This document shows, in pieces, positions 7,114 to 10,567 of a stretch of DNA of 64,000 bases (its first letter is position 1; each line of letters begins with the position of its first letter). A program made the position numbers and the translations under genes. The stretch lies in sequence record PQ464590.1, one strand, 5' to 3'. The notes beneath the pieces are model-generated. The model was not told where the DNA came from, did no database searches, and saw only the letters and a program-made list of their open reading frames with translations.

Positions 7114-9264
7114 TTATAGGTTTTGAGCAGCAGTGGTGTTCTCTGCAATTTGTCTTAGATATCCACTAGAAGTACTGCTTAATTGGTTAGCTTGCTCTGT
7201 GGCACTCATAAGATTATTTATCACTTTCAAAATGCTCTCTTCCATGCTCTGTTTCTGTTCGAATGCCGGATCAATAGCTGATGTTTGTTCAGGTATCTCA
7301 ACTTTAGTAGGTTTAGTATAGGTTGGAGGCTCCATTACTTTTGGTGGCTGTGGTTTTTTAGGCTCAACAGAAGTTTGTGGTGGTATAACAGGTTTACCAT
7401 TAGGAAGTTGGTTAACTTCTTTAGGATCTTCTCCGGCCCACCAAGATTTTGCACTATCCCACCAGCCAGCAATCTTACTTTTCATAGAATCAAATGAAGA
7501 TTGAATACGTTTTTTCATATCTTCGTAATTGAAGTCCAATTTAGAAACTCCATCGAATATATCACCAACATGAGTGAAGATATTTCCTATAGTTTTCTGC
7601 AATTCATCAGAACTTTTTGACCAACCATCACCAGTTATCATTCCCCAAATAAGTTTTGCAAGACTTCCTGGAATATCAATAATATCCGAGAAGAAATTCT
7701 TAAATGCAGTAGTTAATGGTTCAGTATTTCCGGCAACAATTTTTAATAATTCAGTTGGAATGTTCATCAACACACCAAATGCTCCACCCATTCCTGTATC
7801 CATATAATTCAACAAGTCTTTGAACATTTTAGCTGGTAGCATAAAGATGCTATCGACTGAATCATATGCTTCCATGATATATTTCAATGAATTATCACGT
7901 GTGGTTGCCCATAGCTCTTTAAATGGACCAGTGATCGTGTCCGCAAGCCATGTATTGAATCGTGAAGTGAATTCTTCCAGTACTGGACTAACTTCAGCAG
8001 TGTTTTCATTCAGAAGCTTCATACTGTTTTGGAAATCTTGTAAGAATTTTGCTGCTTGTGTGTTCCCACCATCATATAATGCATCAATTTCTAATTGAAG
8101 TTGATGTTGGTGTTCATCTGTCCATTTTTTCAATAATCTCTGAATAGATTTTGCATCACGTTTTGGTCCATTCTGCAATTCAATCATTCGGTCTTTTAAC
8201 ATTTGTGCGAACTGTGAGTTAAATTCATCAGTTAATGGCTTCAACGTTAGACCTTGTGTATTGAACGCTTGGAATTGTGCACCAAATTGACCCATACTTG
8301 AAAAAACAATGTTCATCTGTTTATTCATTTCAGCAGCGTCATCTTCGGTTTTACCCCAAAATCGAGTTAATGCTCTAGCTGTTGCTTGACTATCAAAACT
8401 ATCAGTCATTCCTTCAAATGAACCCAAAAGCTGGTCAACACTCTTACCGACACTCTTACTTAGTTCAGTCATTTGCCTAACAAATAGATCAGTACTTTGA
8501 GCCTGATTGATATTTCTTAAAGATTCTTGTGAAGCATAAAGTTTTTGATATTTGAAGTTTCTGGCTGCTAGGTCAGCTAATTGCTCTTGAGAAACACCAT
8601 ACATACCATTGATATATTGCAATTTCTGAACAGAGTTCAATAAATTACCAAATTGCTCAACACCATTACCATATGTTCCTTCCATTGTAGCAAGAACATC
8701 GGCGTTCTTTTGTAATGCTTGTCCAAATTGAGCATTACTCATTAAGCTTTTACCAGCAGCACGCTCTAACGTACTCATACCAGTTGCTAATGTTAAACCT
8801 GAACTGTTTAATTGATTATACATTTCAAGTTGGGCGTTCATATAATCATATACTTTCATCCCAGCTTCAACAACAAGATTAAATGCTGATGTTACACCCC
8901 CAATAGCAGGGATTGCTTTTCCTAATGCACTACTTACGCCCATTGCGGATTGACCAAGTGAACCAAAAACGTTAGCTGAGGTTGCATTATTTCCAAGTAT
9001 AGTACTTCCAGCACCTCTCATGTTGCCGAACATACTCTTGAACATATTTGAGAATCGTTTAGAATCACCATGACCAGGTGGACGTGGGCCTCCGCCGCCT
9101 GGACCTCCACCAGCCCCGCCATTTCCACCAGTTCCAGGGCCATTCTTCTTAATAGTCTTGTTCATTTCAACTAAAAGTTCTGCCATAGCAGCTAAATGGT
9201 CATTACCAGTACTGGTTTTTGCGAGGATCTCTTGAAGTAGGTAATCACTCTGTGAAATCGCCAT
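7114..9264 (-). CDS. Probable tail tape-measure protein (716 aa)
   Basis: Helical A/Q/S-rich N-terminal half and aromatic-spaced amphipathic repeats (W/F about every 11 aa); adjacent to the gp26-like chaperone gene. At about 0.15 nm per residue it would give a tail near 105 nm (inference). Confidence 0.65.
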   Translation of the reverse strand: MAISQSDYLLQEILAKTSTGNDHLAAMAELLVEMNKTIKKNGPGTGGNGGAGGGPGGGGPRPPGHGDSKRFSNMFKSMFGNMRGAGSTILGNNATSANVFGSLGQSAMGVSSALGKAIPAIGGVTSAFNLVVEAGMKVYDYMNAQLEMYNQLNSSGLTLATGMSTLERAAGKSLMSNAQFGQALQKNADVLATMEGTYGNGVEQFGNLLNSVQKLQYINGMYGVSQEQLADLAARNFKYQKLYASQESLRNINQAQSTDLFVRQMTELSKSVGKSVDQLLGSFEGMTDSFDSQATARALTRFWGKTEDDAAEMNKQMNIVFSSMGQFGAQFQAFNTQGLTLKPLTDEFNSQFAQMLKDRMIELQNGPKRDAKSIQRLLKKWTDEHQHQLQLEIDALYDGGNTQAAKFLQDFQNSMKLLNENTAEVSPVLEEFTSRFNTWLADTITGPFKELWATTRDNSLKYIMEAYDSVDSIFMLPAKMFKDLLNYMDTGMGGAFGVLMNIPTELLKIVAGNTEPLTTAFKNFFSDIIDIPGSLAKLIWGMITGDGWSKSSDELQKTIGNIFTHVGDIFDGVSKLDFNYEDMKKRIQSSFDSMKSKIAGWWDSAKSWWAGEDPKEVNQLPNGKPVIPPQTSVEPKKPQPPKVMEPPTYTKPTKVEIPEQTSAIDPAFEQKQSMEESILKVINNLMSATEQANQLSSTSSGYLRQIAENTTAAQNL

Positions 9265-9274
9265 ACTATATCCT

Positions 9275-9300
9275 TATAAATAATTGTATAAAACTATTTA
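9275..9300. promoter_or_regulatory. Face-to-face late promoters between the tape-measure and chaperone genes
   Basis: TATAAATA on + at 9275-9282 and TAAATA on - at 9295-9300, within a 51-bp divergent gap. Confidence 0.55.
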
Positions 9301-9315
9301 TGATATGGAGTATAT

Positions 9316-10182
9316 ATGAGTAAGATGAACCCATTAGCACAGTACACTAAAATTGAAGTACTGTTTACAAAGCTAATCACTAACGATGTTATAAAATACC
9401 CCGAAGGTGTAGTGAGCAGTACAAAATGCGGTATCTGTGCTCGCTCTGCACGTGATGAGATTGTACTAAACACCGCAGATGCACTAATTGGTGGTGATGC
9501 AGTAGTTAAAGTTATAGAAAACTGTGTTCCTAATGTATCTGATGCTAGTAAATTGTATGTTAACGATGTTGAACAGCTTCTTATTGGTATCAAACTAGCA
9601 ACTAAAGATGAATCCTACGATATCAACGTAGAATGTCCAGAGTGTGAACATCTTGGTAGTTTCAGTCGTGATTTGAATTATCTAATGAACACTGCTACTT
9701 CTTTTGATAAACAACCAACTGTTACAATGGAAAACGGTCTAACTATTTTCTTCCGTCCACAAACATGGGCTGAACACTCTGAATTCAGTACTCGTGTATT
9801 CCAGCAACACAGTCGTTCTAAGAGTATTGATTTGTCAGAAGACATGCCCGAAGAAGAAAAAATTGCTATTTTTGCAGAAATCTTCCAGGAAATGACTCAA
9901 ATCAACTACGATATGATTGTCACTAGTATTGAAAAGATTATCACACCAGAAGATGTTGTAGTAACTGAACCTGAATACATTGCTGATTGGGTTGGCTCTC
10001 TAAGTAAAGCGGATTTGAAAATAGTTCGTGATGCGTCTGACGAGGTAGTGAATGTTGGTATTAGTCATAACATGGAAGTGGAGTGTAATAAATGCCATCA
10101 TGCGTGGGAAATTACTGGTCTACGATATGATCCATCTAATTTTTTCGGACTAGACTTCTCATCAGTAAGCCAGAAGAAATAA
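9316..10182 (+). CDS. Baseplate hub/tail assembly chaperone, T4 gp26-like
   Basis: Motifs MNPL.QY, ARDEIVLNTADAL..G.AV..VI..CVP, D...LLIGI..AT, CPEC and C-terminal CNKC; GGAG SD. Confidence 0.7.
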   Translation: MSKMNPLAQYTKIEVLFTKLITNDVIKYPEGVVSSTKCGICARSARDEIVLNTADALIGGDAVVKVIENCVPNVSDASKLYVNDVEQLLIGIKLATKDESYDINVECPECEHLGSFSRDLNYLMNTATSFDKQPTVTMENGLTIFFRPQTWAEHSEFSTRVFQQHSRSKSIDLSEDMPEEEKIAIFAEIFQEMTQINYDMIVTSIEKIITPEDVVVTEPEYIADWVGSLSKADLKIVRDASDEVVNVGISHNMEVECNKCHHAWEITGLRYDPSNFFGLDFSSVSQKK

Positions 10183-10355
10183 GTGAAATTATAAGGGAAA
10201 TGGAGTTCAACGTCAATGACATTCAGGTGTCATTGATGGATGCTGCTGTCGCAATAGAGAACACTAGCTATGAGGCTCTATTGAATATGCCAGTGCAAAC
10301 AAGGGACTTGATGGTGAAGTCGTACAACAAGAGACAAAAGAAAATGAATCAATAA
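10140..10355 (+). CDS. gp51-like short domain in the -1 frame (frameshift extension, or independent 51-aa gene from ATG 10200); not in the ORF track
   Basis: Open frame 10140-10355 (FFRTRLLISKPEEISEIIREMEFNVNDIQVSLMDAAVAIENTSYEALLNMPVQTRDLMVKSYNKRQKKMNQ). The SYEALLNMPV.TR motif resembles gp51/GT-type chaperone domains; the frame ends right at the terminator. Confidence 0.7.
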   Translation, partial: FFRTRLLISKPEEISEIIREMEFNVNDIQVSLMDAAVAIENTSYEALLNMPVQTRDLMVKSYNKRQKKMNQ

Positions 10356-10381
10356 CCAGCATATTGTTGCTGGTTTTTTTT
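10355..10381 (+). terminator. Intrinsic terminator
   Basis: ACCAGCA-tattgt-TGCTGGT followed by a T run. Confidence 0.8.
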
Positions 10382-10567
10382 ATGTCTAAAATTCTTGAAG
10401 ATTATATTTGATTAGCCAATCTTCGATTGTCTAAGAATTTTCAATTCATTTATCATTCACTTCGTTCATTCTAATGAATCTCAATTCATTTAATATTCTT
10501 ATGTACTTTAATACTTGACGGGATTTGTTGAGGCAATTTCATCCCCCCGCAGGGGAATGAAGACAAT

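What the first reader, a model, noticed from the sequence alone, without database searches (positions are those of the whole stretch)
10137..10355. Lambda G/GT-style -1 frameshift in the gp26-like chaperone, next to the tape measure
Seen: an in-frame slippery heptamer T TTT TTC at 10140-10146, 12 codons before the stop of ORF 9316-10182. The -1 frame has TAA directly before the heptamer (10137-10139), then stays open for 71 codons to TAA 10353-10355, which abuts the terminator. The extension ends in a gp51/GT-like motif (SYEALLNMPVQTRDLMVKSY). The 20 codons between the slip site and ATG 10200 are stop-free. Known: long-tailed phages make tail chaperones G and GT by a -1 frameshift just upstream of the tape-measure gene; T4 uses separate genes 26 and 51. 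Inference: here gp26 and gp51 are joined by recoding, which would link the T4 hub chaperones to the G/GT system; the gene is divergent from the tape measure rather than upstream of it.
Basis: partly seen in the sequence, partly recalled or inferred. Interest (0 to 1): 0.75.

Follow-up and report, generated by a model that had tools for sequence, protein, structure and literature searches.

The report
Conserved frameshift in phage tail chaperone
A giant bacteriophage's T4 gp26/gp51-like tail-hub chaperone gene very probably makes a short and a long protein from one gene by a programmed -1 ribosomal slip; other phage tail genes are known to do this, but no database record of this phage or its relatives annotates it.

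Summary
The window is Erwinia jumbo phage Hallingskeid (PQ464590.1). Every sequence detail in the finding is correct. ORF 9316-10182 is a full-length PF12322 (T4 gp26/gp51 family) protein. An in-frame T_TTT_TTC lies at 10140-10146. The -1 frame is closed just before it and then open for 71 codons, up to a terminator.

The heptamer alone is at chance level in the window (16 found, 19 expected). The comparative evidence is strong:
- All 41 related loci read have a canonical in-frame heptamer and a 70-90-codon -1 ORF starting at it.
- The -1 peptide is conserved from the heptamer onward, even where the gp26-like protein is only 24-27% identical.
- The zero-frame tail varies from 1 to 12 codons.
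- The first ATG in the -1 ORF wanders between codon 4 and codon 35. PA5oct has no start codon at all.
- Four distant lineages moved to other canonical heptamers and kept the same -1 peptide.

T6 gp26 (short) and gp51 (long) are both PF12322 paralogues. The extension resembles the C-terminus of gp51.

So one gene most likely yields a gp26-like and a gp51-like product. This is a new member of a known kind. The T4 gp26/gp51 chaperone link was published in 2022, and I could not read that paper. No product has been observed.

The parts
9316..10355 (+). Whole two-frame gene: the zero-frame ORF plus the overlapping -1-frame ORF. I read it as one recoded gene with a 288-aa product and a predicted 346-aa product (277 zero-frame codons plus 69 -1-frame codons).
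   Evidence: lengths computed from the coordinates.
9316..10182 (+). Zero-frame ORF, 288 aa: a T4 gp26/gp51-family protein (PF12322, phrog_150 'baseplate hub'). It has four invariant Cys (two CxxC pairs). The last 11 residues after the invariant Phe-Phe are not conserved and are predicted disordered.
   Evidence: E 8.5e-24, profile 9-218 of 219; (AF2 pLDDT 84.4; residues 278-288 below 50)
10140..10146 (+). Slippery heptamer T_TTT_TTC in the zero-frame X_XXY_YYZ register. Both tRNA-Phe can re-pair cognately in the -1 frame.
   Evidence: Invariant at positions 1-6 in 19 non-identical GenBank loci and present in 17 of 17 IMG/VR loci. U_UU.U_UU.C is an experimentally shift-prone motif in E. coli (PMC4066793).
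10140..10355 (+). -1-frame open reading frame: 71 codons plus stop. An upstream stop bounds it immediately at 10137-10139. The predicted fold is four helices. This is the proposed C-terminal extension of the long product.
   Evidence: alignment A1; pLDDT 86; similarity to the gp51 C-terminus
10147..10199 (+). Stretch between the heptamer and the first ATG of the -1 frame. It holds no start codon, yet it is conserved as protein in the -1 frame, and third-position variation follows the -1 frame.
   Evidence: entropy by -1-frame codon phase 0.84/0.57/1.20; -1 frame aa identity 0.51 against 0.37 and 0.34 in the other frames; the zero frame has a stop in 13 of 13 loci and the -1 frame in 0 of 13..
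10200..10355 (+). The 51-aa ORF as annotated in GenBank (XPP58715.1, hypothetical protein; phrog_18291). It is the 3' part of the -1 ORF.
10354..10382 (+). Intrinsic-terminator-like hairpin (8 bp stem, 6-nt loop) with a T run. It overlaps the stop of the -1 ORF and ends the transcription unit.
9275..9282 (+). TATAAATA, 41 nt upstream of the ATG. It matches the T4-type late-promoter consensus (from my own knowledge). GGAG at 9307-9310 is a well-spaced Shine-Dalgarno for ATG 9316.
   Evidence: The same octamer lies 42-53 nt upstream of the gene in 9 other loci.
7114..9264 (-). Divergent neighbour, 716 aa, annotated 'virion structural protein': a candidate tape measure (T4 gp29 analogue).
   Evidence: phrog_14121; weak tape-measure phrogs, E 5.8e-5 and 1.8e-3; RaK2 note: similar to a tape measure protein; CBB_251: 29 peptides, 50% coverage in virions; MS-detected in fENko-Kae01 and PA5oct. 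Against: (no significant BLASTP match to T6 gp29).

Best explanation
The gp26/gp51-family gene of phage Hallingskeid is a recoded gene. Most ribosomes read 9316-10182 and release a 288-aa gp26-like protein. At T_TTT_TTC (10140-10146) a fraction of ribosomes slip back one base, with the two tRNA-Phe re-pairing in the -1 frame. These ribosomes continue for 69 more codons to 10353-10355. The result is a roughly 346-aa gp51-like protein that shares the first 277 residues and ends in a four-helix extension.

By analogy with lambda G/GT and T4 gp26/gp51, the pair would act late in infection as non-virion chaperones for assembly of the tail hub and tape measure. The slip would fix their ratio.

Shown: the signal, the two frames, their conservation, and family membership. 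Inferred: the slip itself, its frequency, and the chaperone role.
For: 1. Signal: a canonical in-frame heptamer. It is a shift-prone motif in E. coli, where the tetramer ranking is A_AA.G >> U_UU.C > U_UU.U (PMC4066793).
2. Conservation of the signal:
- T_TTT_TTC is in register in 19 of 20 GenBank loci, from Erwinia, Escherichia and Klebsiella phages to PA5oct, Atu_ph07, Phosso and SCTP-2 (24-27% protein identity). Xoo-sp13 has T_TTT_TTT.
- It is present in 17 of 17 IMG/VR loci.
- The codon before it varies (N, H, S, Y, R, D, A), but its third base is always T.
- Chance is about 2e-7.
3. The -1 ORF starts 0-3 codons before the heptamer in 18 of 20 loci and runs 73-90 codons. It is conserved as protein from the heptamer on (A1), with wobble-position variation in the -1 phase.
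4. The zero frame ends 1-12 codons after the heptamer, with unrelated tails. That tail is predicted disordered.
5. Independent initiation cannot explain it:
- The first ATG falls at codon 4, 5, 8, 15, 21, 22, 33 or 35, depending on the locus.
- PA5oct has no ATG, GTG or TTG in the whole ORF.
- 19 of 20 loci have no start codon upstream in the -1 frame.
6. The site moved but the product was kept. Four distant metagenomic relatives use A_AAT_TTT or T_TTT_TTA in register and have the same -1 peptide start.
7. No in-frame fusion exists in this clade. None of 86 close clusters (all 172-296 aa) and none of the 150 best 50%-identity representatives carries the extension in frame. 138 of the 150 stop 0-18 aa after the C-terminal Phe-Phe.
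8. T6 carries the two forms as separate paralogues. gp26 (208 aa) ends 3 aa after its Phe-Phe. gp51 (249 aa) continues in frame with a block like the window's -1 peptide and a similar C-terminus.
9. Context: a late-promoter-like motif, one terminator after both ORFs, and adjacency to the large virion protein.
Against: - No protein, ribosome-profiling or RNA data exist for any of these phages at this site, so the slip is inferred.
- Hallingskeid has no stable RNA structure 3' of the heptamer (MFE -6.9 kcal/mol, z +1.9) and no upstream SD-like stimulator. Efficiency may therefore be low. Lambda G/GT works at about 1 in 30 (PMC5009743).
- Phe-Phe is itself invariant at the protein level, so part of the nucleotide conservation is protein constraint.
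- The C at heptamer position 7 is also the first base of a conserved -1-frame Arg codon.
- ATG 10200 could additionally give a free 51-aa product.
- Chaperone function is not shown. Foldseek against PDB found no solved relative, and no Pfam tail-assembly-chaperone family matches.
- The title of Vladimirov et al. [quoted passage not shown] I could not read how far that covers these phages.
Confidence: 0.85

Rival explanations
1. Two separate genes. The small ORF is translated on its own, from ATG 10200 here and from other starts or by stop-start coupling in relatives. The heptamer is only a by-product of the conserved Phe-Phe.
For: Every GenBank record that annotates the ORF treats it as a separate hypothetical protein. 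Some relatives have stop/start overlaps typical of coupling (BF17, PBECO4, Turkey5, XbC2, Phosso). An AAGGG lies before ATG 10200. Phe-Phe is invariant as protein.
Against: - Protein-level conservation and -1-phase wobble extend from the heptamer through 20 codons that hold no start codon.
- Start positions are not conserved. PA5oct has no start codon, and RaK2's first ATG is at codon 33 of 73.
- The -1 frame opens right at the heptamer in nearly all loci.
- The third base of the preceding codon is always T.
- Variant lineages keep a canonical heptamer.
- The AAGGG ends 2 nt from the ATG, which is poor spacing.
Confidence: 0.06
2. The long protein is made, but by RNA polymerase slippage on the T run. 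An extra U in a fraction of mRNAs would give the same protein as a ribosomal -1 slip.
For: The site is a homopolymer (T6). The title of Vladimirov et al. [quoted passage not shown] UUUUUUU and AAAAAAA are avoided in E. coli genes, partly because of slippage. The protein product would be indistinguishable.
Against: - T6 is shorter than the runs of about 8-9 known to give productive slippage (my own knowledge).
- The run always starts at codon position 3, the tandem-slippage register. Transcription would not require that.
- Variant lineages have only T5 but a perfect A_AAT_TTT heptamer in register.
- The second Phe codon is TTC in 11 of 12 clusters, although TTT is 66% of Phe codons and would lengthen the run. 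This point is partly confounded by the -1-frame Arg codon.
Confidence: 0.1
3. Artefact or decay. Either a homopolymer-length error in the assembly splits what is really one ORF, or a frameshift mutation has split it.
For: Hallingskeid was studied with Nanopore reads (PMC11780129), and homopolymers are error-prone.
Against: The same two-frame layout appears in 41 loci from independent isolates and metagenomes sequenced over more than a decade. None of 236 related protein clusters has the extension in frame. The zero-frame tails have diverged in length while the -1 frame stayed open.
Confidence: 0.01

Closest known systems
Lambda G/GT and the conserved -1 frameshift of tail assembly chaperone genes in long-tailed phages (Levin et al. 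1993; Xu, Hendrix and Duda 2004; reviewed in PMC5009743)
   Same: Two overlapping ORFs. A heptamer lies a few codons before the stop of the first ORF. The short and long products share an N-terminal part, and the extra domain has about 70 residues. The gene is a late morphogenesis gene next to the candidate tape measure. The chaperone is not listed among virion proteins (CBB).
   Different: The gene is divergent from the candidate tape measure instead of directly upstream on the same strand. The N-terminal part is about 277 aa with four Cys, much larger than gpG. No match was found to Pfam chaperone families or to any solved structure. The heptamer is T_TTT_TTC rather than lambda's.
T4-type gp26 and gp51 (baseplate hub subunit and hub assembly catalyst), reported as the tail assembly chaperones of T4-like phages by Vladimirov, Gautam and Davidson 2022 (PMID 34826709; not held, known here only from citing papers)
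   Same: Same protein family: T6 gp26, T6 gp51 and the window's protein are all full-length PF12322. gp26 stops 3 aa after its Phe-Phe, like the short product. gp51 continues in frame with a block and a C-terminus resembling the window's -1 ORF.
   Different: Straboviridae carry two paralogous genes, gp26 on one strand and gp51 on the other ahead of 27-28-29. T6 gp26 has no slippery heptamer: its Phe-Phe is TTC TTT. The jumbo phages have a single gene plus a frame change. The gp51 extension is about 48 aa against 69 aa.
-1 frameshift proposed for the tail assembly chaperone of Pakpunavirus/Vandenendeviridae and Andersonviridae myophages, with a conserved GTTTTT motif (PMC12846349)
   Same: T-rich slip site at the 3' end of the short ORF. 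The downstream piece is routinely annotated as a separate hypothetical gene. The argument rests on the -1 frame being open in every genome.
   Different: A different protein family and position (directly upstream of the tape measure). Those phages are not PF12322 carriers as far as shown here.
E. coli dnaX and IS3/IS1 -1 frameshift cassettes (PMC4066793)
   Same: X_XXY_YYZ tandem slippage. U_UU.U_UU.C is one of the heptamers used by IS elements.
   Different: Those cassettes usually have an upstream SD-like or a downstream hairpin or pseudoknot stimulator. None is evident in Hallingskeid. Strong 3' hairpins occur only in some distant relatives (Atu_ph07 z -4.2, Xoo-sp13 z -3.6).

Membership tests
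PF12322 T4_baseplate (T4 gp26/gp51 family) | Full-length match to the family profile above the gathering score | tested here: met
   84.9 bits against a cut-off of 24.5, profile positions 9-218 of 219; phrog_150. Foldseek BFVD hits to 'baseplate hub assembly protein, T4-like', E down to 3e-22, TM about 0.8.
PF12322 T4_baseplate (T4 gp26/gp51 family) | Two CxxC pairs (putative zinc site) kept across the family | tested here: met
   C107, C110, C257 and C260 are invariant in A2 and A3. T6 gp51 has weak Zn-ribbon hits. Metal binding itself was not tested.
gp51-type long form (PF12322 plus C-terminal domain, PF28602 in precomputed tables) | C-terminal extension homologous to that of gp51 | tested here: inconclusive
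   hhalign of A1 against 97 gp51 homologues: E 1.5e-3 (full length) and 2e-4 (C-terminal part), probability 17-50%. 0 of 300 column shuffles reach the score. The shared junction block is seen in 55 of 97 gp51 homologues, in 12 of 19 -1 ORFs, and once in the six-frame translation of the window. PF28602 is not in the local Pfam copy. Foldseek BFVD with the extension found only its own orthologues.
Programmed -1 ribosomal frameshift cassette | X_XXY_YYZ heptamer in the zero-frame register, conserved in relatives | tested here: met
Programmed -1 ribosomal frameshift cassette | -1 ORF open from the heptamer and under protein-coding selection without its own conserved start | tested here: met
Programmed -1 ribosomal frameshift cassette | Stimulatory element (3' hairpin or pseudoknot, or 5' SD-like). 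Common but not obligatory. | tested here: not met
   Hallingskeid z +1.9 and the enterobacterial clade z -0.4 to +1.9. Significant hairpins occur only in Atu_ph07, Xoo-sp13 and Phosso. No SD-like sequence lies upstream.
Programmed -1 ribosomal frameshift cassette | Trans-frame protein observed | not testable with these tools
   No proteomic or ribosome-profiling data were available. No paper found mentions it.
Tail assembly chaperone, G/GT type | Gene directly upstream of, and co-oriented with, the tape measure gene | tested here: not met
   The gene is adjacent to the 716-aa candidate tape measure but divergent from it. The layout is the same in most relatives. In Vibrio phage 2.275.O the large gene is upstream on the same strand.
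Tail assembly chaperone, G/GT type | Sequence or fold membership in a recognised chaperone family | tested here: not met
   Pfam, NCBIfam and PHROGs give only gp26/gp51-type families. Foldseek against PDB has no hit with E below 0.4.
Tail assembly chaperone, G/GT type | Absent from mature virions | tested here: inconclusive
   The CBB virion MS table lists CBB_247 and CBB_251 but not CBB_249 or CBB_250. This assumes RefSeq and paper numbering agree. RefSeq nevertheless labels gp250 'structural protein'.
Tail assembly chaperone, G/GT type | Short form binds the tape measure; the extra domain of the long form binds the tube protein | not testable with these tools
   Binding cannot be tested here. 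Modelling the long form would need a joined two-frame sequence, which I did not build.

The most novel reading that the evidence does not exclude
The PF12322 proteins are a zinc-binding chaperone family with no detectable fold relationship to gpG-type chaperones. They have nevertheless arrived at the same short/long -1 frameshift design. The frameshift is the ancestral and by far the commonest state: it spans more than a thousand 50%-identity clusters of jumbo and other myoviruses, and the slip site has migrated between canonical heptamers. On this reading, the textbook T4 pair gp26/gp51 is a derived case in which duplication hard-wired the two products into two genes.
Probability: 0.35. Interest if true: 0.6.

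Novelty: new member of a known kind. Interest (0 to 1): 0.45.

Why it matters
- Annotation. None of the 20 GenBank records examined annotates the recoding. The 3' part is called a hypothetical protein or, in RaK2, PA5oct and fENko-Kae01, is left out altogether. The predicted long product is therefore missing from the proteomes of a large phage group, including phages considered for therapy or biocontrol.
- T4 biology. The data give an independent line of support for reading gp26 and gp51 as the short and long forms of one chaperone. That role has been unclear since neither protein was placed in baseplate structures (my own knowledge).
- Recoding. The site is a clean natural example of a slip site that stays canonical while moving by one codon, and it works across hosts from Enterobacterales to Rhizobiales and Pseudomonas. 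That makes it a useful set for studying the U_UUU_UUC motif with and without 3' hairpins.

The kind of mechanism is well known, and the T4 link was published in 2022, so this extends known work rather than breaking new ground.

Tried and rejected
- Structural link to solved chaperones: Foldseek against PDB with a good model (pLDDT 84) gave nothing.
- Family search of the extension gave nothing beyond phrog_18291: Pfam on all 19 members, NCBIfam, PHROGs at E up to 1.
- The word-index protein search with the 71-aa -1 ORF found only one near-identical cluster. I reached the small-ORF homologues by exact look-up instead.
- Foldseek BFVD with the extension found only its own orthologues and did not reach gp51.
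- A conserved RNA stimulator was rejected for the enterobacterial clade.
- Tape-measure identity of the neighbour through T6 gp29 (BLASTP E 0.04) and through PDB sequences was not established.
- The key paper (PMID 34826709) is not held. Six citing papers gave only two one-sentence summaries, and these differ.
- The Hallingskeid paper, the CBB paper and the PRFect paper do not mention this frameshift.
- I tried to learn how cyanophages encode the pair. 80 kb of S-RIM8 held no annotated or HMM-detectable PF12322 gene, and I stopped there.
- The search for related loci in IMG/VR returned only 17 close relatives.
- Assembly error and pseudogene were considered and rejected (see rivals).
Full report
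**What the window is.** The region is 100% identical to Erwinia phage Hallingskeid (PQ464590.1, 366 kb; window position = record position minus 186,000). Hallingskeid is a jumbo myovirus with a 131-nm contractile tail. [quoted passage not shown] Its host is a plant-surface bacterium, and the phage is not a virus of animals, people or crops.

**The observation.**
- ORF 9316-10182 (+) is 288 aa.
- TTTTTTC at 10140-10146 is in the X_XXY_YYZ register of that ORF.
- TAA 10137-10139 closes the -1 frame just before the heptamer.
- The -1 frame is then open for 71 codons to TAA 10353-10355.
- The 20 codons before ATG 10200 hold no stop and no ATG, GTG or TTG.
- A terminator-like hairpin at 10354-10375 with a T run follows.
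- Upstream lie TATAAATA at 9275-9282 (T4-type late-promoter consensus, from my own knowledge) and a well-spaced GGAG.

The heptamer by itself means nothing: there are 16 copies in the window against 19 expected. No gene here is broken. I count zero breaks.

**What the proteins are.** The 288-aa protein is a full-length member of PF12322, the T4 gp26/gp51 family (E 8.5e-24; phrog_150). The AlphaFold model is confident (pLDDT 84, pTM 0.82). Only the 11 residues after the invariant Phe-Phe are disordered. Foldseek finds 'baseplate hub assembly' proteins of many myoviruses in BFVD but nothing in the PDB. The annotated 51-aa ORF belongs to phrog_18291, of unknown function.

The divergent neighbour at 7114-9264 (716 aa) is a virion protein in relatives, according to mass spectrometry. 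It has weak tape-measure profile hits and a length in proportion to the tail. Its identity as the tape measure is plausible but not shown.

**Comparative test.** I read 20 GenBank loci, 17 IMG/VR loci and 4 metagenomic contigs. The GenBank phages were Hallingskeid, EJP2, 7t3, fENko-Kae01, BF17, Turkey5, GAP32, fHe-Yen9-03, PBECO4, RaK2, CBB, XbC2, Kaldavass, A4, Vibrio 2.275.O, PA5oct, Phosso, Atu_ph07, SCTP-2 and Xoo-sp13.
- T_TTT_TTC is in register in 19 of the 20 GenBank loci and in all 17 IMG/VR loci. Xoo-sp13 has T_TTT_TTT.
- The residue before the heptamer varies, but the third base of its codon is always T. Heptamer positions 1-6 are invariant.
- From the codon usage of these genes, the chance that 12 clusters below 75% nt identity all carry T_TTT_TTY is about 2e-7.
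- The -1 frame opens 0-3 codons before the heptamer in 18 of 20 loci and runs 73-90 codons.
- The zero frame ends 1-12 codons after the heptamer, with unrelated tails.
- The -1 translation aligns from its first residue across all lineages (alignment A1).
- In the stretch up to Hallingskeid's ATG, variation peaks at the third position of -1-frame codons. Pairwise protein identity there is 0.51 in the -1 frame against 0.37 and 0.34 in the other two frames.

**Why the small ORF is not a separate gene.** The first ATG of the -1 ORF falls at codon 4, 5, 8, 15, 21, 22, 33 or 35, depending on the phage. PA5oct has no ATG, GTG or TTG anywhere in the ORF. RaK2's first ATG is at codon 33 of 73. In 19 of 20 loci there is no start codon in the -1 frame upstream of the heptamer. 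In Hallingskeid the AAGGG ends 2 nt from the ATG. Independent initiation may add a free small protein in some phages, but it cannot explain what is conserved.

**The site can move.** A profile search of 1.84 billion representatives found 1,418 relatives. Of the best 150, 138 stop 0-18 residues after a C-terminal Phe-Phe, and none carries the extension in frame. The same holds for 86 closer clusters. Twelve of the 150 lack the Phe-Phe. The DNA of four of these shows other canonical heptamers in register: A_AAT_TTT one codon upstream, with only a T5 run, or T_TTT_TTA. The -1 frame there begins with the same residues. This keeps the tandem-slippage logic rather than the homopolymer length. It is my main argument for a ribosomal slip over polymerase slippage. 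Polymerase slippage remains possible and would give the same protein.

**Stimulators.** Hallingskeid and its enterobacterial relatives show no stable structure after the heptamer (z from -0.4 to +1.9). Atu_ph07, Xoo-sp13 and Phosso have strong hairpins 7-8 nt downstream (z -4.2, -3.6 and -3.1). U_UU.U_UU.C is among the heptamers that shift without a stimulator in E. coli, and U_UU.C is the second-best tetramer (PMC4066793). Lambda makes GT at about 1 in 30 (PMC5009743). A low, signal-only frequency would therefore be in character.

**Relation to T4.** In phage T6 (NC_054907.1), gp26 (208 aa) and gp51 (249 aa) lie back to back, and gp51 heads the 27-28-29 hub and tape-measure operon. Both are full-length PF12322 proteins. 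gp51 has about 48 extra C-terminal residues, listed as PF28602 in precomputed tables.
- T6 gp26 stops three residues after its own Phe-Phe, which is encoded without a slippery run.
- T6 gp51 continues in frame through a block of Phe, a basic residue, two Leu, Pro, two acidic residues and Ile/Val. In the gp51 family these columns are 70-98% conserved. The window's -1 frame shows the same kind of block right after the heptamer.
- hhalign puts the last ~30 residues of the extension on the last ~30 of gp51 (E 1.5e-3 and 2e-4). A global alignment lines up both blocks, and 0 of 300 column shuffles reach the observed score.

So the short product corresponds to gp26 and the predicted long product to gp51. 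The jumbo phages use one gene with a frame change, and the Straboviridae use two paralogues.

[quoted passage not shown] The paper is not held. One citing paper says some T4-like phages carry a short gene and a long fused gene instead of frameshifting. Another says poly-T -1 signals are known in their TAC-N genes. The link between the T4 hub chaperones and G/GT is therefore not new, and part of what I show may already be in that paper. What I can state is narrower. None of the 20 GenBank records annotates the recoding, and no held paper on these jumbo phages mentions it.

**Verdict.** I put the probability of a programmed -1 ribosomal frameshift giving a gp26-like and a gp51-like product at about 0.85. 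The chaperone role is inferred from family, timing signals, neighbourhood and analogy, at about 0.6. Membership of the G/GT chaperone family by sequence or fold was tested and not met, so the claim is 'works like', not 'is a member of'.

- In my reasoning I once placed a few residues from both frames side by side.
- The long form was never assembled, which is why it was neither folded nor searched.

Noticed in passing
L039 1087-1093, L040 and L042 (same pattern), L041 863-869: Distant PF12322 genes that lack the C-terminal Phe-Phe use other canonical heptamers in register: A_AAT_TTT one codon upstream, or T_TTT_TTA. The -1 peptide start is unchanged, so the slip site has migrated.
   Followed up: partly
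L017 3330-3395 (Atu_ph07), L019 3207-3275 (Xoo-sp13), L016 (Phosso): Strong hairpins begin 7-8 nt after the heptamer (z -4.2, -3.6 and -3.1). The enterobacterial clade, including the window, has none. The frameshift stimulators appear to be lineage-specific.
   Followed up: partly
window 9634-9645 and 10084-10095 (Cys107/110 and Cys257/260 of the 288-aa protein): Four invariant cysteines in two CxxC pairs suggest a zinc site. They probably explain odd database names for homologues, such as 'ribosomal protein S27E' (JGI) and 'Lead, cadmium, zinc and mercury transporting ATPase' (fHe-Yen9-03).
   Followed up: partly
L015 3331-3558 (PA5oct), L010 2334-2555 (RaK2), L004 2396-2614 (fENko-Kae01): The -1 ORF is not annotated at all in these three GenBank records. 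In PA5oct it has no canonical start codon.
   Followed up: yes
window 10188-10216, minus strand: A near-consensus sigma-70-type promoter (TTGACG, 17 nt, TATAAT; 11 of 12) lies inside the -1 ORF and points antisense into the gp26-like gene. The number of promoter-like sites in the region is at chance level.
   Followed up: no
window 10441-10452 and 10481-10492; 10540-10558: In the intergenic region after the terminator, the 12-mer TCAATTCATTTA occurs twice about 40 nt apart. A G+C-rich hairpin (CCCC..GGGG) follows.
   Followed up: no
L042 1-1401: In one metagenomic relative, the large divergent neighbour (1,376 aa) carries lysozyme and M23 peptidase domains, as some tape measure proteins do. 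This fits the tape-measure reading of the neighbour.
   Followed up: no
window 7417-7530 (residues 578-615 of the 716-aa protein) and T6 gp29 residues 379-417: A short Trp-rich stretch of the candidate tape measure resembles one in T6 gp29 (BLASTP E 0.04 for the single comparison). This is suggestive only.
   Followed up: no
BFVD entries A0A343LED6 and A0A343LED7 (Leptospira phage LE4): A gp26-like protein (290 aa) and a 71-aa protein with adjacent accession numbers both gave weak structural hits to the two parts. The same two-ORF layout may exist far outside the jumbo phages.
   Followed up: no
rows H199 and H206: A few recent Straboviridae records already name gp51 homologues 'tape measure protein assembly chaperone' or 'baseplate assembly chaperone'. 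The 2022 reinterpretation is reaching annotation.
   Followed up: no
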